From positions 1-7,612 of IMG/VR virus record IMGVR_UViG_3300017469_000055: 7,612 nucleotides of DNA; one strand, written 5' to 3'. Position numbers and translations under genes: made by a program. The stretch's first letter is position 1; each line of letters opens with the position of its first letter. Below, piece after piece: positions 249 to 7,560 of this stretch. Below the pieces are notes generated by a model. It searched no databases, had not been told where the DNA came from, and saw only the letters and a program-made list of their open reading frames with translations.

Positions 249-419
249 ATGAGTTTTAATAGTATAACAGATATAGAAATACTTTTAATTTATACAGACG
301 TTCTTTTCTTTTCATTATTTCTGTATTTCATCTTACAATTAAGACAATTAATGAAAAAAATTGAGGAAGAAGAAATGTTAAAAATGTTAAAGAAAAAATA
401 TGAAAAAAGTGATAGATGA
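249..419 (+). CDS. 56-aa single-pass membrane protein (MSFNSITDIEILLIYTDVLFFSLFLYFILQLRQLMKKIEEEEMLKMLKKKYEKSDR)
   Basis: Manual translation. AGGTGA SD at 239-244 precedes the ATG at 249. Hydrophobic stretch at about aa 11-29, then a charged helical tail. Confidence 0.7.
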   Translation: MSFNSITDIEILLIYTDVLFFSLFLYFILQLRQLMKKIEEEEMLKMLKKKYEKSDR

Positions 420-539
420 ATGAAACGGGAAACATGGAGAGATATTAGAGATTTAATATGTGTTATTTCTGTTGATTTTACAATAAGTTTTCTTTTATAT
501 GTGATTCTAGAATATATTATAAATCACAAATTAATTTAA
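420..539 (+). CDS. 39-aa hydrophobic peptide (MKRETWRDIRDLICVISVDFTISFLLYVILEYIINHKLI)
   Basis: ATG directly follows the upstream TGA (translational coupling). One TM-length hydrophobic segment. The stop is followed at once by a T-tract. Confidence 0.55.
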   Translation: MKRETWRDIRDLICVISVDFTISFLLYVILEYIINHKLI

Positions 540-624: not shown

Positions 625-849
625 ATGAGGTTCCAAGTTGTAAATGTTACATATCACAACTTTGTACAAGTAAAACAAAATGGAAATGTTGTTTACGCTA
701 AATGTACATGTTGCCAGAAACAAAGAATTGCTGTATATATACAGACAGAATCAAAAAGAATATTTTTCTTTTCAGGATATGATGAAAATATAGCAAACAT
801 GCATTTTTTAAGTTTGATTAAAAAACAAAGTTCACAAAATCAAGATTGA
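625..849 (+). CDS. 74-aa hypothetical protein with a CTCC cysteine cluster
   Basis: ORF track 616..849. The ATG at 625 is preferred over the TTG at 616, which lies in the predicted initiator. Has its own promoter and a T-tract terminator at 854-860. Confidence 0.7.
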   Translation: MRFQVVNVTYHNFVQVKQNGNVVYAKCTCCQKQRIAVYIQTESKRIFFFSGYDENIANMHFLSLIKKQSSQNQD

Positions 850-853
850 ACAC

Positions 854-860
854 TTTTTTT
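854..860 (+). terminator. oligo-T terminator
   Basis: T7 run 5 nt after the stop of 625..849, followed by a pyrimidine-rich tract. Confidence 0.55.
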
Positions 861-941
861 CCTACTCAATTTTTCTGATTTGGGTTACCCCTTTTCTCTT
901 CTATTTTTTTGGACTATTTTTCTCCTGTTTGTAATATTATT

Positions 942-962
942 TCTAAATTTGCGAAATTTAGA
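942..962. repeat. inverted repeat TCTAAATTT-GCG-AAATTTAGA (operator candidate)
   Basis: Perfect 9-bp arms with a 3-nt spacer, about 36 nt upstream of the TATA box of the wHTH gene. Confidence 0.6.
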
Positions 963-990
963 TAGCGTAAGATGTTAATGTAAACCTATA

Positions 991-1032
991 AAGAAAATTT
1001 TATATATAAAAGCTTACATATTATATATTGAT
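991..1032 (+). promoter_or_regulatory. BRE-TATA promoter of the wHTH gene
   Basis: AAGAAAA then TTTATATA (999-1006). ATTGAT at 1027-1032, with the same spacing as the 625 promoter. Confidence 0.6.
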
Positions 1033-1038
1033 GGCAAT

Positions 1039-1263
1039 ATGAGAGTAGGAAGAAAGGAACAAGAAATCTTAAATTATTTATCTACATTTCCTTGCGGAGT
1101 ATGGAAAGAAGATTTGATAAATAATTTTAGCTTTGCAAAACGTTATAACATGATATTAAATAAAAGATTGCAAAATATGGAAAAGAAAGGATTGATAATT
1201 ATAAAAACAGAAATAAATCCAGAAACTGGGAGACAGAAAAAACGTGTTTATTTAAGACAATAA
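1039..1263 (+). CDS. winged helix-turn-helix DNA-binding protein (74 aa)
   Basis: wHTH pattern: EQEILNYL ... EDLINNF ... LNKRLQNMEKKGLIII, plus wing TEINPETGRQKKRVYL. Confidence 0.75.
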   Translation: MRVGRKEQEILNYLSTFPCGVWKEDLINNFSFAKRYNMILNKRLQNMEKKGLIIIKTEINPETGRQKKRVYLRQ

Positions 1264-1271
1264 TTTTTTTT
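1264..1271 (+). terminator. oligo-T terminator between convergent genes
   Basis: T-run immediately after the TAA at 1261-1263. Confidence 0.5.
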
Positions 1272-1281
1272 CTTTTATAAA

Positions 1282-1614
1282 TTATTTTTTACTTTCCCAT
1301 AAAATTTCTAGTCCTTGAATTCTATCCCATGTTATTCTTACTTTCTTTAATGTTATTTTATCATGATTATGTAAATCTCCAACATCAAATTCTACATCTA
1401 AACTTGTTTTTAAGATATGTAAAAATTTAAAATCAATATTGTTTATCAGAAAATTCATTTCTACAAGATTATCAAAATCAGAAAATGATAAATCAATTAA
1501 TGTCAAATTAGTAATATGTATATCGTATAGATTGTTCTTATATTCATAATATCTAAATTGTAGATTATTCCTCCTTAGAAAATCAAAAAGAATTTTTGCA
1601 TCTTTTACTTTCAA
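1282..1614 (-). CDS. hypothetical protein (110 aa), coupled to thyX
   Basis: TTG start overlaps the thyX stop (TTGA). AGGTGA SD lies just upstream, inside the thyX 3' end. Confidence 0.75.
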
Positions 1615-2372
1615 AATTCTTCACCTTTTTTTGAATTTTGTATACATTTATAAATTCCTTCTTTTGGAACTCCTTCTATACATCTTTTCGATATAAACTC
1701 CGTCTTCTCGTTTATTGAGTCAAGAGTTATCGGCGTGACACGTATAAAGTTCTCATGAATTATACAATTAGGTCCAGCATAACGGAATAGTCTAGGATGT
1801 ACTTTCTTCACTTCTTCGAGCATCTTCCATGCTAATTGTCGAAGTTCCCACTGAGTTCTAGAACATAAACGTAAGGCAAAGAAGTTATAAAGTTCTCTAG
1901 CATTCATGGTAACGACAATATTTGTATTTATGCCGTTTGGTAGGACGTAACGAGCATCTTCTTCTGGTACACCGGCTTCTAGGAGTTCATAATAACGTTT
2001 ATATGAATCGCTATAAGCTTTTTCTACAATTTCTTTAGCTCTTTTTTCTGTAGATGACGGTATAATTGGCTGATAATATTCTTCAATTGGTTTAGCAAAT
2101 CTATGACTCATTTGAGTATATGATGCAATTCTATGTCTTACAAGTTGATGTGAAACAACTCTAGAAATTCCTTCAATTGAGAAAGTGTATACGCTGTGTT
2201 CAAGTACAGACCAATATCCATGAATTATAGCATCAGATATCCATAGTTCTATTTCATCATCTGTCATTTTTTCTTTATGATATTCCCATCCTTTTCTTGA
2301 CCTACTCATTTTTGATGCAATAGCAATAACTTTTTCTCCGTCTGGAGTATATGAAACTAAAGTAACTTTCAT
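1611..2372 (-). CDS. thyX: FAD-dependent thymidylate synthase ThyX (253 aa)
   Basis: ThyX signature [13 protein letters not shown], plus [17 protein letters not shown] and [13 protein letters not shown]. The ATG at 2372 has an AGGAG SD upstream; the ORF-track start at 2381 is a GTG overlapping that SD. Confidence 0.95.
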
Positions 2373-2384
2373 TTTTAACACTCC

Positions 2385-2588
2385 TTATCTCCTCAATTTA
2401 GGACCTTTTTCTACCTTAATTTGTAAATTTTCCTCATTTTTCTTTTCTTCGTCGAAAAGTTTGTTTAACGCTAGTCTAATAACTTCGCCTTTTGACATTC
2501 TATGTTTTAGTCTATAGGCTTCTAGTTGTTCATACATATCTTCATCTATCTTAAACGTTACTACAATATTGCAAACTTTAGCACACAT
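2385..2588 (-). CDS. ribbon-helix-helix (CopG/aCcr1-like) transcription regulator (67 aa)
   Basis: VVTFKIDEDMYEQLEAYRLKHRMSKGEVIRLALNKL fits an RHH fold. C-terminal KVEK tail. Confidence 0.85.
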   Translation of the reverse strand: MCAKVCNIVVTFKIDEDMYEQLEAYRLKHRMSKGEVIRLALNKLFDEEKKNEENLQIKVEKGPKLRR

Positions 2589-2867
2589 TTAAACCACCAC
2601 ATCAAACTTCTTTACAATTACCATTTTTCCTATTGTCACGCTAACAGTATATTGTTTTTCATTTGTCAATTTGTTTATTCTAATTTCAAAATAGAAAGTT
2701 TTATTTCTTATTTCTAAATATCCCTTAATAATGTTATCTTTTTTTGTATAAAATAATATTTCAAATTTTTCTAAAAAATTCACAGTTTTGTGTAATAAAA
2801 TTTCTATATCTTCTTTTTCTATTTCTTGTACTATATTTACTATTTCTTGAAATGTATTTTGTGCCAT
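2589..2867 (-). CDS. rudivirus-type hypothetical protein (92 aa)
   Basis: ORF track 2589..2876. The ATG at 2867 is preferred over the TTG at 2876. The stop abuts the RHH start. Own TATA+GTC promoter at about 2890-2905. Confidence 0.75.
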   Translation of the reverse strand: MAQNTFQEIVNIVQEIEKEDIEILLHKTVNFLEKFEILFYTKKDNIIKGYLEIRNKTFYFEIRINKLTNEKQYTVSVTIGKMVIVKKFDVVV

Positions 2868-2962
2868 ATTTCTCAATAAAAATGTTGTGTTATGACAAAT
2901 AAAAAGGTTTTTAAATTTGCATTTTCCATGACGAATATGTCATATTAATAATATAAGGAATA

Positions 2963-3604
2963 TTACTTTTTGTCAGTTGATTGTAAATAATCCAAAACAG
3001 AACCAGAACATTTAGATTTAAAATCACAATTTTTACATAAATAATTGTTAGCTCCTGGAATGTTTTTATAATCTGTTAGTTTCAAATATTCTTTAAATTT
3101 CTTAATCCAATCTATAGCTTTTTGAATATATTCTTCTAATACATTTTTCTCAATTTGAAATTGTTTAACTTCTCTATTTATTCTATTTAAATATATGATA
3201 TAAACATTATCAATTTTGTAATTTTGTTGTTGTAAAAGATGATAATATATTGCAATTTGGTATAAATGATATTCTTTGATATTAAAATAATTGTTGGAAA
3301 TTGTTTTTATTTCTAGTAAATCGTTTCCACAAATCAAGTCTATTCTACCAGAAATTTTTAGACCTTCTATTTCTCCTTTTACCTCTATCTCTGATTTACA
3401 TCCTAATTTCTCAGTAAAATAGTTCTCTATTCTCAAATGATGTTGTTCTCCAAGCTCCAAAGTAAGTTCATTTATTCCTTTTTCAAATTCAAATTTCCTA
3501 GAGAAATATGACTTTCTGAAACATATTCCAACTTCAGAAGGAAAAACTAAGTCTTCTGGATATTTTATTTTGAAACTTTGTCTAACTAAATCTTCGTAAT
3601 TCAT
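2963..3604 (-). CDS. cas4: Cas4-like RecB-family nuclease with four Fe-S cysteines (SIRV2 gp19-like, 213 aa)
   Basis: N-terminal PSEVGIC, RecB motifs GRIDL / LEIKT / QIAIY and C-terminal [10 protein letters not shown]. The ATG at 3604 has a GGTGA SD. No CRISPR context, so this is a solo viral Cas4. Confidence 0.92.
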
Positions 3605-3606
3605 TC

Positions 3607-4914
3607 TCACTCACCTAAATTTGAAAATCTCATGAAATTGATGATTTGACTACAAATTTCTTCCTTCGTTCTCTGTCCAATTTGTATATCTATGTCAAGA
3701 GCCTGTAAGAGTATTTGTATATCTATTGCCTGTTCTTGTCTTCTAGATTCTAAGTTATCACAAATTACATAGTTATTTATACTGTTTATCTTCTGCTGAA
3801 TTAGTTCTACTAGAGCTTTCAGAATTGACGGATATAGAACTCTGGAATTTACAATTTTTTCATAAGTCTTTTTAATTGCTAATTGTATAATATGAATTCT
3901 GTCGAGAATTGCAGAAGTAAAAATTTGATAGTTTACAAGATAATCTTCTACATCTGGAGTTCTTAATCTGTTTAGAGTCATAGAATATGGATTTCCAGCG
4001 TAAATAATCGGTATACATTTCTGAATAGTTGAGGATTTTGATTCTGTTCCAGCTCCTCTGGTCCAGACACAATTTTCCAGACCAGTTGAAAGAGTGGCAT
4101 TTATTGCTCCTAATTCTTTTATGGAATATCCATCTTTCCAATTCTGAATTTCATCAAATATCAAACCATTTGACAAAAACACTGCACCATACATATTATT
4201 TCTGGCGTCATATACTAGATTTGCATATGTTGGAGTTTCTGTATAATAACGGAAATTAAATACTTCTTGTAGTATCATGAAAGTTGTAGTTTTTCCAGTT
4301 CCACGATTAGAAATTTCTATATAATTTATTTGTCTTTTCGTAATTGGGGATTTAAATAATGGGAATAATCTAGGAAGATATAGAAAGATATCTTGGATTT
4401 CCATTTTAGATGGGTCGTATCCGAAAGCTTGGAGTAGAAGAGCATATGTTTGATGTTCTTGATTAGCTAGGTCAAAAAGTTCTTTAGCAATTTCATAATT
4501 ATTCGGTGGTTCTATAGAATAAATATCGTTAATATACCATCCGTTAGACCCTTTTCTTATTTTCACAAACATAAAAGAAGTTATTAAATTATAGAAATCA
4601 TCAGGATTATCTGCTATATAATGTGGGTCAAAACTTGCTATAAACCCATTTTGAAATCTAGCAATTATTTTGTCATTTTTTACTTTAAAATTTGTTATTT
4701 TAGAGATAAATTTTATATCATCATAATATGGCAAAGTTGCTGAAAAATATTGTTGGTCTATTCCGCGTTTATAAGCTTTAAGAATTTCAATCTTTTTCTT
4801 ATCATCAATTTGTTTACCAGAAAGAATTATATTGAGAACTCTTTCTGTATCTCTCGGATTATAAAAAAAAGAATGTTCTTTAACTTTTTCAAGGAATTGG
4901 AAATTCCCATCCAT
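3607..4914 (-). CDS. AAA+ ATPase / putative helicase (SIRV2 gp18/ORF436-like; Lon/BrxL-type ATPase domain)
   Basis: Walker [10 protein letters not shown], Walker B LIFDE, sensor IIYAGN, Arg finger AILDRIH. Lies between SSB and Cas4, as in rudiviruses. Confidence 0.88.
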
Positions 4915-4939
4915 AAAAAAAATGGTATCTTATGACATT

Positions 4940-5353
4940 TTAAAATTCATCTTCAACATTCTTCTTACTTTGTTTCTTTTGTGATTTCTCTTGTTTTTGT
5001 TCATCTTGTTCTTCTTCTTCTGTATTTTCAAGTTCTAATTCTTCCTCTCTTACATTATTTCCATTTCTAGGAGAAAATTTTACATATTCGTTAAGTAAAT
5101 CTGCATATTTAGATAGGAATTCACTGATTAATCTCAAATCTTCTGCATCATTTGCTGTAATTCCTATCTGTTTCCTATAGTTTGCTTGTGAATGAATTGT
5201 CATGGAATATCTTACTTTTCCATTCTCTGGTATAGCGTTTAATTGTACTACAATTCTTTTTATACCTTTTATCTTTAGAATTCTTGAAACAATTTTGTTT
5301 TGTTCTTTAGCTTGTTTACCTAACTCATCTATTATTTCTTTTAGGGACGCCAT
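4940..5353 (-). CDS. rudiviral single-stranded DNA-binding protein (SIRV2 gp17/ORF131-like)
   Basis: MASLKEIIDELGKQAKEQNKIVSRILKIKGIKRIVVQLNA N-terminus. Disordered acidic tail ending EDEF. Conserved position upstream of the ATPase and Cas4. Confidence 0.85.
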   Translation of the reverse strand: MASLKEIIDELGKQAKEQNKIVSRILKIKGIKRIVVQLNAIPENGKVRYSMTIHSQANYRKQIGITANDAEDLRLISEFLSKYADLLNEYVKFSPRNGNNVREEELELENTEEEEQDEQKQEKSQKKQSKKNVEDEF

Positions 5354-5513
5354 TTACATCCCCTAATTAAAATATTATATTATGACAAATTTAAATATTA
5401 ACAAACTTATAAGTTAGCATATTTTTCAATATTTTTATTATAAACACAAAAATCAATATACATTATATTTTGAATATTTGAGTTGAGAATTGAGAGATAA
5501 AAGAAAAAAAGAT

Positions 5514-5786
5514 TTAGAGTAACTTAAAGAATAGAGACCTTATCAGCCTTGGTATTTTTGTATTATATTTTCTAGCTAATTGTTCTAATTTGTCGTAGTA
5601 TAATTCGTCTACTGTAAAAAACGCTCTGCCGTCATAAACTTCTTGTTTTTCAATTAGACTGAATTCAGTTTGTTGAGAAAATATTTTATCTATTTCTTGT
5701 TTGATTTGTTCTCTTTTTTCATAAAAAATAGATTGATATTTATGTGGAATTCTTACCTCAATATATTTATTTCTTTGTCTTCTCAT
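5514..5786 (-). CDS. putative tandem RHH DNA-binding protein (90 aa)
   Basis: C-terminal half RAFFTVDELYYDKLEQLARKYNTKIPRLIRSLF is RHH-like. N-terminal half YIEVRIPHKYQ has a similar beta-strand pattern. AGGAG SD upstream, A-run (T on minus strand) at 5504-5510 downstream. Confidence 0.65.
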   Translation of the reverse strand: MRRQRNKYIEVRIPHKYQSIFYEKREQIKQEIDKIFSQQTEFSLIEKQEVYDGRAFFTVDELYYDKLEQLARKYNTKIPRLIRSLFFKLL

Positions 5787-5857
5787 ATTTTTTTATACTC
5801 CTAACCTTGATATAAACGTGACATATACATTTAAATGTCAGATTTTCATTTACATTC

Positions 5858-6205
5858 ATGGACTGTAAAAAAGTTTTTAACTATCACTTTCTTTACAGTT
5901 ATACTTATTTTATTACAATTTCTACGAATTATCGATATGGAGATACAACAAAAATCTATAAAAAATTTCGGCAATATGTCTATAATCATGACTCAGATTC
6001 ACATGTTTTTTCTGTGAAAGAATATACAACAAAATTCCATGGGCTACATTATCATGTTCTCGTTTTTACGAATAAGAAACTTGATTATTCCAGAGTTCAT
6101 AAACATATGCCTTCTCATAGTGACATAAATATACAATTGGTTCCAAAAACAAAAAAAGATATAAAAAAAGTTTTAACTTATATGTTAAAAAATCAAAATG
6201 TCTAG
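5858..6205 (+). CDS. rep: HUH-endonuclease replication initiator Rep (SIRV1 ORF119-like)
   Basis: Motif I FITIST, motif II GLHYHVLV, motif III TYMLK with the catalytic Tyr. 115 aa, with no helicase domain. Confidence 0.92.
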   Translation: MDCKKVFNYHFLYSYTYFITISTNYRYGDTTKIYKKFRQYVYNHDSDSHVFSVKEYTTKFHGLHYHVLVFTNKKLDYSRVHKHMPSHSDINIQLVPKTKKDIKKVLTYMLKNQNV

Positions 6206-6206
6206 A

Positions 6207-6503
6207 TTATTTAGATGCTGAAGTTTGTGAATTTGTATTTTGTTCTGCTTTCTTTTGTGCTAATGAATTTACATCTCTAAGCGTATCCATATTCAGAAGT
6301 GAATTTATTCCAAGTGTAGTGGTATCTTTTAAACTTTCTGCAGTTACAATTGTAGATTTTGTCATTTGGTCGATAGCAGTTCTGAATGCCTCGTTTGTTT
6401 GTTTTTCGTTATAAAGATGTATTACTTCTCCGATTATATAACTCGTTACTAATGCTCCCATCAATACTAGAAATCCTTCATACGCATATGTTATTACAGT
6501 CAT
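6207..6503 (-). CDS. pvap: virus-associated pyramid protein PVAP (SIRV2 P98 / STIV C92 family), 98 aa
   Basis: From the ATG at 6503: N-terminal TM segment (FLVLMGALVTSYIIGEVI), then HLYNEKQ..AIDQMTKST..KDTT.GIN.LLNMDTLRDVNSLA, closely matching P98 as recalled. The ORF-track extension to 6629 is spurious. Confidence 0.92.
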   Translation of the reverse strand: MTVITYAYEGFLVLMGALVTSYIIGEVIHLYNEKQTNEAFRTAIDQMTKSTIVTAESLKDTTTLGINSLLNMDTLRDVNSLAQKKAEQNTNSQTSASK

Positions 6504-6601
6504 TTCAATTTTATATTGAACAAATTGCTTAGTAATAAATTTTCCGCAAAAATTCGAAACATATAAATATGTCATAATAAATATACATAAATTGATAAAA
6601 A
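6504..6601. promoter_or_regulatory. divergent promoter region pvap / svtR
   Basis: Minus strand: GGAAAA+TTTATTA (TATA at 6533-6539) and ATTGAA just before the pvap ATG. Plus strand: TATAAATA (6562-6569), TGTCATAA (6570-6577) and ATTGAT (6591-6596). Confidence 0.65.
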
Positions 6602-6775
6602 ATGACGGAAAAAATAAAATCTGAACCAAAATCAGAAAAAGTGGTTTTTGGAATAAATATGGACAGAAATCTCAAAATCAAACTAAAGAAATATTGTGCT
6701 GAACAAGATATAACAATTACAGAAGCTATAGAAACAGCAATTAAAGAATATCTAGAAAAGAGAGGAGTAAAATGA
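6602..6775 (+). CDS. svtR: SvtR-like RHH transcriptional repressor (57 aa: MTEKIKSEPKSEKVVFGINMDRNLKIKLKKYCAEQDITITEAIETAIKEYLEKRGVK)
   Basis: Manual translation, below the ORF-track cutoff. The VFGIxMD..LK..LK.YCA......AIE.AIKEYL.KR pattern matches SIRV1 SvtR (ORF56b) as recalled. Confidence 0.88.
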   Translation: MTEKIKSEPKSEKVVFGINMDRNLKIKLKKYCAEQDITITEAIETAIKEYLEKRGVK

Positions 6776-6948
6776 GAGTTATAACTGTGAAACTTGAAGA
6801 AGACCTTCTTAATAAACTTGACAGTTATGCTGAAAATCATAATCTTTATAGATCAGATGTTGTTAGGAATGCAATTATAGAATATCTAATGAAACATTTA
6901 GAAAATAAAGAAAATCAAGAATTAAAAGTTGAGAAAAAAGGTCTATAA
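6772..6948 (+). CDS. RHH (CopG/aCcr1-like) regulator (58 aa: MRVITVKLEEDLLNKLDSYAENHNLYRSDVVRNAIIEYLMKHLENKENQELKVEKKGL)
   Basis: Manual translation. ATGA overlap with the svtR stop, GAGGAG SD at 6762-6767, classic RHH pattern, T-tract at 6964-6970 downstream. Confidence 0.85.
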   Translation: MRVITVKLEEDLLNKLDSYAENHNLYRSDVVRNAIIEYLMKHLENKENQELKVEKKGL

Positions 6949-6963
6949 TCTTAAGTTATTAAC

Positions 6964-6970
6964 TTTTTTT
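6964..6970 (+). terminator. oligo-T terminator of the svtR-RHH operon
   Basis: T7 run 16 nt after the stop, between convergent genes. Confidence 0.5.
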
Positions 6971-6973
6971 CTT

Positions 6974-7516
6974 TTAACTTATATAATTCTTAATTTTATA
7001 TGTTTCAAATTTTGGAAGAGTCACATTATTTTGTTTTTGATATTTTCCGTGATACGGTTTCTCAACTGGAGATAATGTTTTAGCGAAAATTAGATGTAAA
7101 AATCTCTGTCCAGATTCAAGTTTTACTGGGAATTCTGACCCTACAATTTCTATCGTAAGTTGTCCTTTGAATCCCGCATCCACGATAGTTGGAGGTATAG
7201 AAATTCCTAATCTAGCATATGTAGAACGTAAATTTACAAACGCCATAATGTCATTTGGCAATTCTATATATTCGTCAGTTGTCATTAAGAGATGTTCATG
7301 TGGTTGAACTATAATGTCATTTTTATTTATAATTTCGTAAAAATCTTCTATATTATCGCCTGGTTCAAAAACTTTGTTTGTCTTTTTTAGTCTGGCAAAT
7401 TGATTTCCAATTCTTAAGTCTACACCGTTTTCTCTAACTATTTCTTCATCAAATGGTACTATTTTTATCCATTCTTTTTCTAGATAATATTTTAAATCTC
7501 TATCGCTTAAAATCAT
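6974..7516 (-). CDS. dcd: dCTP deaminase / dUTPase (trimeric dUTPase-fold, Sulfolobales Dcd-like; 180 aa)
   Basis: [39 protein letters not shown] (putative catalytic Glu present) and [15 protein letters not shown]. Confidence 0.9.
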
Positions 7517-7521
7517 ATTTG

Positions 7522-7560
7522 ATCAATCTAAAAAAACGTTTTATGACAAATATATTTCAA
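7522..7560 (-). promoter_or_regulatory. TATA+GTC rudiviral promoter of dcd
   Basis: Minus strand reads GAAATATATTTGTCATAA ... ATTGATCAAAT-ATG. Confidence 0.65.

What the first reader, a model, noticed from the sequence alone, without database searches (positions are those of the whole stretch)
6772..6948. Hidden aCcr1-like RHH, one of two paralogues with a KVEK tail: possible viral control of host cell division
Seen: this unannotated ORF (MRVITVKLEEDLLNKLDSYA..LYRSDVVRNAI..KVEK) and ORF 2385..2588 (VVTFKIDEDMYEQLEAY..KGEVIRLAL..KVEK) share the RHH core and a C-terminal KVEK. Known, from recall: the Sulfolobales cell-cycle regulator aCcr1 (MRVVTFKVEEDLL..LDRYA..LNRSEAIRKAI..KVEK) represses cdvA and has viral homologues. 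Inference: the virus has two divergent copies, with recognition strands VITVK versus VVTFK. They could block division or act as dominant-negative partners.
Basis: partly seen in the sequence, partly recalled or inferred. Interest (0 to 1): 0.6.

Follow-up and report, generated by a model that had tools for sequence, protein, structure and literature searches.

The report
Two aCcr1-type repressor genes in a rudivirus
The ORF is a real gene for a small DNA-binding repressor of a known family that archaeal viruses use to stop their host dividing; the modest new point is that this virus lineage carries two diverged copies, one at each end of an inverted gene block.

Summary
6772..6948(+) encodes a 58-aa ribbon-helix-helix (RHH) protein (P0001). 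2385..2588(-) encodes a 67-aa RHH protein (P0002). They are 34% identical, and both end in the [KR][VI]E[KRT] tail of cellular aCcr1.

The window is a fragment of a usarudivirus-like rudivirus. P0001 sits where SIRV9 gp19 sits, and P0002 sits where SIRV2 gp21 sits. Li et al. 2023 placed both of those proteins in the aCcr1 (SiL_0190) branch. SIRV2 gp21 was shown to block division and to bind the cdvA promoter. So viral control of host division is a published idea, not a new one.

Three things are not in the papers read:
- A metagenomic, ThyX-carrying lineage (five contigs) keeps both copies, in inverted orientation, around a 4.2-kb block that is inverted relative to SIRV2.
- P0002-type proteins are under strong constraint (dN/dS about 0.08). 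They have a conserved 7-residue N-terminal extension and lack the R2 equivalent.
- P0001 is the most divergent gene between near-identical genomes.

The VITVK/VVTFK difference lies at core-facing strand positions, so it does not point to different DNA specificity. The tree cannot place either protein inside the core aCcr1 clade. The cell-division function is inferred, not shown.

The parts
6772..6948 (+). P0001: 58-aa RHH protein of the aCcr1/gp21 family, positional orthologue of SIRV9 gp19. It has R2, K7 and R27 and a tail ending in KVEKKGL.
   Evidence: RHH_1 above cut-off. (74% identity to SIRV7 gp13 and 69% to SIRV9 gp19 over residues 1-39). (synteny). (dN/dS 0.28-0.49). (AF2: helices 10-22 and 27-43, tail at low confidence). 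(best structural matches are CopG-type RHH proteins).
2385..2588 (-). P0002: 67-aa RHH protein of the same family, positional orthologue of SIRV2 gp21 (ORF59b). It has a conserved 7-residue N-terminal extension, no R2 equivalent (I8), and a tail containing KVEK.
   Evidence: RHH_1, 27.4 bits. (51-55% identity to SIRV1/2/3 gp21). (order ORF436-ORF207-ORF84a-RHH). (dN/dS 0.07-0.09). (extension conserved across the 67-aa homologues).
6602..6775 (+). P0003: SvtR/56B-type RHH repressor, first gene of the two-gene operon. Its stop codon overlaps the P0001 start (ATGA).
   Evidence: 56B_RHH, 39.1 bits against a cut-off of 27.2. (PHROG 582, Arc-like repressor). (overlap conserved in six viruses).
6562..6569 (+). 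Putative archaeal TATA box (TATAAATA) of the SvtR-P0001 operon, inside an intergenic block that is invariant across six related viruses. It lies about 35 nt upstream of the SvtR start.
   Evidence: alignment A3, invariant columns. Its role as a promoter is inferred and was not measured.
6760..6767 (+). Purine-rich Shine-Dalgarno-like stretch (GAGAGGAG) 4 nt upstream of the P0001 start codon, as expected for an internal gene of a Sulfolobales operon.
   Evidence: Inference.
6964..6975 (+). T-rich run in the 25-nt gap between the convergent P0001 and dCTP deaminase/dUTPase genes. Likely the transcript end.
   Evidence: Inference from the known use of oligo-T terminators in archaea.
2589..6771 (.). 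4.2-kb block bracketed by the two inverted paralogues: ORF84a-like, Cas4-like nuclease, BrxL-like ATPase, PHA01746-like, SIRV4-gp10-type ORF90, 117-like protein, pyramid protein and SvtR. Apart from the pyramid gene, which was not found in the SIRV2 stretch compared, the genes keep the SIRV2 order but are inverted relative to the dUTPase gene.
   Evidence: SIRV2 order. (same layout in five contigs). (annotation).
1611..2381 (-). ThyX thymidylate synthase, 3 nt downstream of P0002. It follows P0002 in every contig that carries the P0002 type.
   Evidence: Thy1, 220 bits. (co-occurrence). (81% nt identity to SMV3 thyX).

Best explanation
Both ORFs are real genes for small dimeric RHH repressors of the aCcr1/SIRV2-gp21 family, carried by a usarudivirus-like rudivirus.

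P0001 (6772..6948) is the second cistron of a conserved SvtR-RHH operon and is the positional orthologue of SIRV9 gp19. P0002 (2385..2588) closes the ATPase / Cas4-like nuclease / ORF84a gene string and is the positional orthologue of SIRV2 gp21.

[quoted passage not shown] This represses cytokinesis genes while DNA synthesis continues, so the infected cell becomes an enlarged, non-dividing virus factory.

What is shown here: gene reality, fold, family, synteny, conserved DNA-contact residues, and the selection regime.

What is inferred: DNA target, repression, and the cell-division phenotype.
For: Family and fold:
- Pfam RHH_1 above cut-off for both, and PHROG 876 for both.
- AF2 model with the two RHH helices.
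- Structural matches at 0.8-1.4 A rmsd to CopG, CopA(SO) and StnY.

Orthology by position:
- SIRV9 gp19 directly follows the Arc-like/SvtR gene, as P0001 does.
- SIRV2 gp21 follows ORF436-ORF207-ORF84a, as P0002 does.

Published function of relatives:
- SIRV2 gp21 and cellular SiL_0190 cause growth arrest, cell enlargement and polyploidy, and bind the cdvA and ESCRT-III-2 promoters.
- SIRV9 gp19 was placed in the same branch and tested by overexpression. The text read reports lower transformation efficiency and growth retardation for the constructs, but gives no cell-size data for SIRV9 gp19 itself.
- aCcr1 R2, K7 and R27 are needed for DNA binding.
- P0001 keeps all three. P0002 keeps K13 (= K7) and K33 (= R27).

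Tail: the aCcr1-type VEK tail is present in both and absent from aCcr2-like proteins.

Identity to cellular aCcr1: 42-54% for P0001 and 40-42% for P0002, over about 53-55 residues.

Selection and conservation:
- Purifying selection on both.
- Both copies are kept in five related contigs.
Against: - Neither protein lies inside the well-supported core aCcr1 clade (96/86), which holds cellular aCcr1, SIRV1/2 gp21 and SMV3 gp63.
- AU tests do not reject joining the P0001 group to the aCcr1 core (p 0.18), and equally do not reject joining it to aCcr2 (p 0.37).
- P0002 lacks the R2 equivalent, and R2A abolishes binding in aCcr1.
- No host genome is linked to this fragment, so no target promoter could be examined.
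- The window shows no excess of aCcr1-box motifs: GTAWTAC occurs once against 0.86 expected, and AGTATTA occurs 0 times against 2.8 expected.
- SiL_0190 apparently could not replace gp21 in SIRV2. Viral copies may therefore do something beyond mimicking aCcr1.
Confidence: 0.6

Rival explanations
1. P0001, and perhaps P0002, mainly regulates viral promoters. It would act as a timing switch working with the co-transcribed SvtR repressor, and any effect on host division would be incidental.
For: - P0001 is translationally coupled to SvtR behind an invariant promoter block.
- SIRV2 gp21 was tested on viral promoters as well, including its own. The passage read does not say which viral promoters beyond gp01 and gp15 were bound or not.
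- gp21 seems essential to SIRV2 and could not be replaced by the host protein.
Against: - No aCcr1-box enrichment in the 7.6 kb available.
- Li et al. found only non-specific binding of recombinant gp21 when they looked for its site in viral DNA, and concluded that the targets are host genes.
Confidence: 0.2
2. The paralogues work through mixed dimers, either with each other or with host aCcr1/2/3. The mixed dimers would be dominant-negative or altered-specificity partners.
For: - RHH proteins are obligate dimers.
- P0002 keeps the host-type core-facing strand residues V and F.
- P0001-type proteins have I and V at those positions, a size swap that might insulate them from host partners. This is inference only.
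Against: - No data.
- Overexpressing viral homologues copies the aCcr1 overexpression phenotype rather than reversing it. That fits a functional repressor better than a poison subunit.
- A complex prediction was not run. Its controls are unrelated proteins, so it would pass for any RHH pair.
Confidence: 0.1
3. P0001 is an antitoxin-like or otherwise unrelated RHH protein. Its top Pfam hit is DUF6290, and antitoxin DNA-binding domains are among its structural matches.
For: - DUF6290 at 28.4 bits.
- CopA(SO), MazE and ParD antitoxin domains appear among the fold matches.
Against: - No toxin gene is adjacent. The upstream gene is SvtR and the downstream gene is a convergent dUTPase.
- The closest sequence relatives are all viral or cellular aCcr-type proteins of Sulfolobales.
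Confidence: 0.03
4. The ORF at 6772..6948 is a chance open frame in AT-rich DNA.
For: The window holds many short spurious ORFs, including an antisense 103-aa frame at 6529..6840.
Against: - Conserved as an intact frame in all related viruses, with an overlapping start/stop junction and a Shine-Dalgarno-like stretch.
- dN/dS below 0.5.
- Curated family matches.
Confidence: 0.01

Closest known systems
SIRV9 gp19 (YP_009362571.1) and the SIRV4-11 orthologues (Usarudivirus)
   Same: Same genomic position as P0001: directly after the SvtR/Arc-like gene with an overlapping start, and near the pyramid gene. RHH core identical in 27 of 39 residues (69%), or 74% for SIRV7 gp13. Same VITVK strand.
   Different: The SIRV4-11 proteins are 48-52 aa and lack the VEK tail (1 of 21 carry the motif). 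P0001 keeps a 58-aa aCcr1-like length and the tail.
SIRV2 gp21 / ORF59b (NP_666555.1), Icerudivirus
   Same: Same upstream synteny as P0002 (ORF436, ORF207, ORF84a, then the RHH gene). 51% identity over 53 residues. KVEK tail. VVTFK/IITFK-type strand. Shown experimentally to arrest division and bind the cdvA promoter.
   Different: P0002 has a conserved 7-residue N-terminal extension and an Ile where gp21 has Lys and aCcr1 has Arg (position 2). It branches with YNP1 gp61, outside the core clade that holds gp21.
Cellular aCcr1 (SiRe_0197 / SiL_0190 / Saci_0942)
   Same: 58 aa, single RHH domain, R2/K7/R27, C-terminal [KR]VEK tail. 42-54% identity to P0001 and 40-42% to P0002.
   Different: Cellular aCcr1 is nearly invariant across Sulfolobaceae. 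The two viral proteins lie on separate, longer branches. P0001 differs at the core-facing strand positions (I4, V6).
Cellular aCcr2 (SiRe_1157 / SiL_RS14755 / Saci_1391) and aCcr3
   Same: The RHH core of P0001 is about as similar to aCcr2 (56% over 39 residues) as to aCcr1. aCcr2 and aCcr3 also bind the cdvA promoter and cause cell enlargement on overexpression.
   Different: The aCcr2-like proteins recovered are 41-49 aa and have no VEK tail (0 of 6).
AFV1 ORF59b plus ORF48 (Ungulaviridae)
   Same: Another virus with two family members about 250 nt apart. One is 59 aa with the RVEK tail and falls in the core clade. The other is 48 aa and has no tail.
   Different: Both AFV1 genes lie on the same strand in one gene string. 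They are not inverted copies bracketing a block.

Membership tests
aCcr1 / SIRV2-gp21 RHH family (broad sense: the cluster of Li et al. 2023, clades I-III of Yang et al. 2023) | Single ribbon-helix-helix domain of about 45-65 aa | tested here: met
   Pfam RHH_1 above the curated cut-off for both. AF2 helices 10-22 and 27-43. CopG-type structural matches.
aCcr1 / SIRV2-gp21 RHH family (broad sense) | Significant sequence similarity to characterised members (SIRV2 gp21, SIRV9 gp19, SMV3 gp63) | tested here: met
   tblastn of both proteins hits the SIRV2 gp21 locus (E 2e-5 and 1e-8). P0001 also hits SIRV9 gp19 (3e-10) and SMV3 gp63 (7e-8). P0002 found neither of those two at E <= 1e-3. Both are in PHROG 876.
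aCcr1 / SIRV2-gp21 RHH family (broad sense) | Positional orthology with a rudiviral member | tested here: met
   P0001 sits at the SIRV9 gp19 position. P0002 sits at the SIRV2 gp21 position.
aCcr1 proper (clade with cellular SiRe_0197 / Saci_0942) | Phylogenetic placement inside the clade that holds cellular aCcr1 | tested here: inconclusive
   Both lie outside the 96/86 core clade on an unresolved backbone. AU tests: core + P0002 clade p 0.34; core + P0001 group p 0.18; aCcr2 + P0001 group p 0.37. Only 58 alignment columns were available.
aCcr1 proper | DNA-binding residues R2, K7 and R27 | tested here: met
   Met for P0001, which has R2, K7 and R27. Only partly met for P0002: K13 and K33 correspond to K7 and R27, but I8 replaces R2.
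aCcr1 proper | C-terminal [KR][VI]E[KR] tail (a marker found here, not a published criterion) | tested here: met
   Core clade 20/21, P0001 type 8/8, P0002 type 14/14, aCcr2-like 0/6. Li et al. describe the C-terminus of gp21 as unstructured and not essential for SIRV2 replication.
aCcr1 proper | Specific binding to the aCcr1-box in the cdvA promoter, and cell enlargement with more than two genome copies on overexpression | not testable with these tools
   Needs EMSA or ChIP and expression in S. islandicus.
SvtR / 56B family | Match to the 56B_RHH model | tested here: not met
   Only the neighbouring P0003 matches 56B_RHH (39.1 bits). P0001 and P0002 do not.

The most novel reading that the evidence does not exclude
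The two inverted paralogues mark the ends of a 4.2-kb invertible block and have split the ancestral gp21 role. P0002 would be the conserved copy, with a new N-terminal extension replacing R2. P0001 would be a fast-changing, recombining cassette whose alleles differ even at predicted DNA-reading strand positions (RVITVK, RVITVR, RPISVK, RVISIK). That variation would tune the virus to different host aCcr-box repertoires or host species.
Probability: 0.15. Interest if true: 0.55.

Novelty: new member of a known kind. Interest (0 to 1): 0.35.

Why it matters
Two 2023 papers already showed that Sulfolobales viruses control host division through aCcr1 mimics. This window therefore adds members, not a new principle. 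Three points are still useful.

- **Two loci, not one.** The 'core' rudiviral gp21 gene is really two loci. One sits at the ORF84a end (SIRV1/2) and one at the SvtR/dUTPase end (SIRV4-11). One uncultured lineage keeps both, which gives a natural system for asking why a virus would need two such repressors.
- **Contrasting evolution.** The two copies evolve very differently. P0002 is tightly constrained. P0001 is the most divergent gene between 95%-identical genomes.
- **A variant without R2.** The P0002 type lacks an arginine that is essential in aCcr1. That offers a test of how the beta-ribbon reads DNA.

Tried and rejected
- **Genome scan with P0001 alone.** It found only a 144-aa RHH-domain protein in a Hadesarchaea MAG, which is not useful.
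- **P0039.** I first took it for a cellular aCcr1 of Acidianus sp. HS-5. It lies in an integrated fusellovirus-like element next to SSV1_D-63 and an integrase, so I relabelled it as a provirus copy.
- **Cellular aCcr1 and aCcr2.** I identified G045 as S. acidocaldarius from its contig length of 2,225,959 bp (my own knowledge). The identification also rests on three of the four residue differences the paper names (T23, L38, T47); the fourth, at position 43, reads I rather than T.
- **aCcr1-box scans.** No enrichment in the window.
- **Supplementary files.** Those of both 2023 papers are not held.
- **Fast LG+G4 AU tests.** These gave p 0.039 for core + P0001 group and 0.023 for aCcr2 + P0001 group. 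The careful PMSF tests gave 0.18 and 0.37. I take the fast rejections to be artefacts of shallow constrained searches.
- **Not needed.** Read laying, the look-up of sequencing runs and the large representative search.

Full report
**What the window is.** The 7612-nt window is an IMG/VR virus record, estimated 23% complete. Positions 2999-7557 match Yellowstone usarudiviruses SIRV5/6/7 at about 78% nucleotide identity. The thyX gene at 1636-2372 matches bicaudavirus SMV3 at 81%.

Gene content fits a rudivirus:

| Window position | Gene |
|---|---|
| 1611..2381 (-) | ThyX |
| 2963..3610 (-) | Cas4-like PD-(D/E)XK nuclease |
| 3607..4914 (-) | BrxL-like ATPase, the 'ORF436' of SIRV2 |
| 4940..5353 (-) | PHA01746-like protein |
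| 5514..5786 (-) | ORF90, homologue of SIRV4 gp10 |
| 5858..6205 (+) | 117-like protein |
| probably 6207..6503 (-) | pyramid-forming protein |
| 6602..6775 (+) | SvtR/56B-type repressor |
| 6974..7516 (-) | dCTP deaminase/dUTPase |

**The observation.** ORF 6772..6948(+) gives the 58-aa protein P0001, and ORF 2385..2588(-) gives the 67-aa protein P0002, exactly as quoted.
- Both exceed Pfam's curated RHH_1 threshold and fall in PHROG 876.
- P0001 finds P0002 in the window at E = 7e-9 with 34% identity.
- An AF2 model of P0001 (mean pLDDT 82.7) has helices at 10-22 and 27-43 and a low-confidence tail from about residue 44.
- Its best structural matches are CopG, the CopA(SO) DNA-binding domain, StnY, omega repressor and PutA, at 0.8-1.4 A rmsd over 42-46 residues.

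**Both are real genes.**
- P0001 overlaps the stop of the SvtR-type gene (ATGA) and is preceded by a GAGAGGAG stretch.
- The junction, and an upstream intergenic block containing TATAAATA, are conserved in six viruses.
- dN/dS among related contigs is 0.28-0.49 for the P0001 type, 0.07-0.09 for the P0002 type and 0.13-0.16 for SvtR.
- The seven-residue N-terminal extension of P0002 is conserved across the 67-aa homologues (pattern M-C-A/T-K-V/I-C/Y-N), so its start codon is genuine.

**What is already known.**
- Yang et al. 2023 (PMC9976878) defined aCcr1 as a 58-aa RHH repressor. It binds the aCcr1-box in the cdvA promoter, and R2, K7 and R27 are needed for binding. Homologues occur in Rudiviridae and other virus families.
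- Li et al. 2023 (PMC9976892) showed that SIRV2 gp21 (ORF59b) and cellular SiL_0190 arrest growth, enlarge cells, raise DNA content and bind the cdvA and other promoters.
- Li et al. call gp21 a core gene of all Rudiviridae. They placed usarudiviral SIRV9 gp19 in the same branch and tested it.
- A 2026 paper adds aCcr2 and aCcr3, which also bind the cdvA promoter.

**Orthology by position.** In SIRV9, gp19 directly follows the Arc-like (SvtR) gene gp18, which is exactly where P0001 sits. In SIRV2, gp21 follows ORF436, ORF207 and ORF84a. In the window, P0002 follows the homologues of the same three genes on the minus strand.

The gene orders compare as follows:
- **SIRV2:** SvtR(-), ORF115(-), ORF90(+), ORF131b(+), ORF436(+), ORF207(+), ORF84a(+), gp21(+), then dUTPase(-).
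- **Window:** the same genes from SvtR to ORF84a, plus the pyramid gene between the 117-like gene and SvtR (its counterpart was not found in the SIRV2 stretch compared). The block is inverted relative to dUTPase, with P0002(-) at the ORF84a end and P0001(+) between SvtR and dUTPase.

Each paralogue therefore keeps one half of the SIRV2 gp21 neighbourhood, and the two are inverted copies bracketing a 4.2-kb block. In SIRV7 the P0002 position holds an unrelated acidic coiled-coil protein. SIRV2 has no aCcr1-type gene next to SvtR.

Either an ancestral inverted pair was reduced differently in different genera, or the window's lineage gained a second copy. My data do not decide between these.

**Distribution.** Five IMG/VR contigs carry the P0002 type, always followed by ThyX. 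All four that reach far enough also carry a P0001-position gene. With the window, that makes five records with both. No isolate genome in the phage collection has the P0002 type. AFV1 also has two family members, ORF59b and ORF48.

**Cellular references.** Using a genome handle obtained through an Acidianus locus, I searched 61 genomes of the same GTDB order.
- Seven full-length matches lay in six of these genomes. One is the provirus copy P0039. The other six give five distinct, highly similar 58-61-aa proteins that I take as cellular aCcr1. These end in RVEK or KVEK, or RVER in one, followed by [IV][KR][LF].
- One comes from a 2,225,959-bp contig, which is the size of S. acidocaldarius DSM 639 (my own knowledge). 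It shows T23, L38 and T47, three of the four differences the paper names for SacCcr1.
- Shorter tail-less proteins of 41-49 aa starting MRVITFK or MVRVITFK fit the description of aCcr2, with T5/T6 between R and K.

**Phylogeny.** A careful tree (81 rows, 58 columns) gives these groups:

| Group | Support | Members |
|---|---|---|
| Core aCcr1 clade | 96/86 | cellular aCcr1, SIRV1/2 gp21, SMV3 gp63, SRV ORF58, ARV3, SBRV1, STIV2 B60, AFV1 ORF59b, ASV1 A59 |
| aCcr2 clade | 99/91 | aCcr2-like cellular proteins, SMV4, YNP2 |
| P0002 clade | 100/99 | 67-aa proteins; sister to YNP1 gp61 (96/85) |
| P0001 clade | 100/94 | lies within an 89/99 group with SIRV10 and isolate V60 |

The backbone is a polytomy. 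AU tests under the mixture model do not reject core + P0002 clade (p 0.34), core + P0001 group (p 0.18) or aCcr2 + P0001 group (p 0.37). So the tree neither confirms nor refutes strict aCcr1 membership.

The tail motif is more informative. It is present in 20 of 21 core members, all P0001- and P0002-type proteins, no aCcr2-like protein and no more distant cellular relative. Li et al. report this region of gp21 as unstructured, and the C-terminus as not essential for SIRV2 replication.

**The recognition strand.** Aligning CopG to P0001 through helix 1 puts the CopG base-contacting residues R4, T6 and T8 (my own knowledge of the CopG-DNA structure) opposite V3, T5 and K7.
- This agrees with the published roles of K7, and of T6 in aCcr2.
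- These three positions are identical in P0001, P0002 and cellular aCcr1.
- The VITVK/VVTFK difference lies at positions 4 and 6, which face the dimer core. It gives no reason to expect different DNA specificity. It could affect which partners can pair, but that is speculation.
- P0002 has I8 where aCcr1 has R2, preceded by an extension with a conserved lysine.

**A divergence hot spot.** The window and contig L006 are 95% identical over 6.8 kb, with many 100% stretches.
- Across the P0001 gene, identity drops to 81%, 81% and 60% in successive 90-nt bins.
- P0001 is 65% identical at protein level, while the flanking dUTPase is 100% and P0002 is 100%.
- Among related contigs the P0001 position holds 58-aa tailed, 52-aa tail-less and 63-aa forms.
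- Strand variants include RVITVR, RPISVK/RPISFK and RVISIK.

This looks like allele exchange by recombination combined with relaxed constraint. I did not map breakpoints.

**Conclusion.** The finding is correct as an observation and as a family assignment, but the central idea is published. The likely function is aCcr1-type repression of host division genes, and that is inferred. The new elements are the paired, inverted arrangement in an uncultured ThyX-bearing lineage, the P0002 subtype without R2, and the unusual variability of P0001.

Noticed in passing
window 1611-2381 (-): The thyX gene is 81% identical in nucleotides to thyX of bicaudavirus SMV3, while the flanking DNA (1-2998) has no near match in SIRV4-11. 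In every related contig thyX directly follows the P0002-type gene. This suggests a P0002-ThyX(-ORF110) cassette, possibly exchanged between virus families.
   Followed up: partly
window 5514-5786 (-): ORF90 (P0004) is the homologue of SIRV4 gp10, which Li et al. list as a separate cluster of viral RHH proteins. Its C-terminal 35 residues look RHH-like, but no Pfam family matches it. The window would then encode four RHH-type regulators (P0001-P0004).
   Followed up: partly
window 6207-6629 (-): The mechanical ORF for the pyramid-forming protein is 140 aa, but the PHROG match starts at residue 43 and the SIRV7 orthologue is 98 aa. The true start is probably at 6503. That leaves a 98-nt divergent promoter region shared with the SvtR-P0001 operon.
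   Followed up: partly
window 6540-6580 (+): An intergenic stretch (AATAAA..CAAAAA.TC.AAA..TATAAATATGTCATAAT) is almost invariant across six viruses whose coding sequences differ by 20-25%. It is likely the promoter plus an operator of the SvtR operon.
   Followed up: no
window 772-7557 versus L006 1-6798: The two genomes show a mosaic of 100%-identical stretches and 80-90% stretches (for example 1042-1941 at 100%, 3382-3471 at 86%, 6352-6531 at 84-86%). This points to frequent recombination within this virus population.
   Followed up: partly
L028 4001-4177 (Acidianus sp. HS-5 chromosome): An aCcr1-type 58-aa gene with the RVEK tail lies inside an integrated fusellovirus-like element, next to an SSV1_D-63 homologue and a tyrosine integrase. 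The host's own aCcr1 copy is elsewhere in the chromosome.
   Followed up: no
window 2568-2588 (-), first seven codons of P0002: The N-terminal extension carries two cysteines (C2, C6). C2 is kept in most homologues and C6 alternates with tyrosine. No function is apparent.
   Followed up: no
window 249-539 (+): Two short back-to-back ORFs (56 and 39 aa) have hydrophobic segments typical of small membrane proteins. They were not examined.
   Followed up: no
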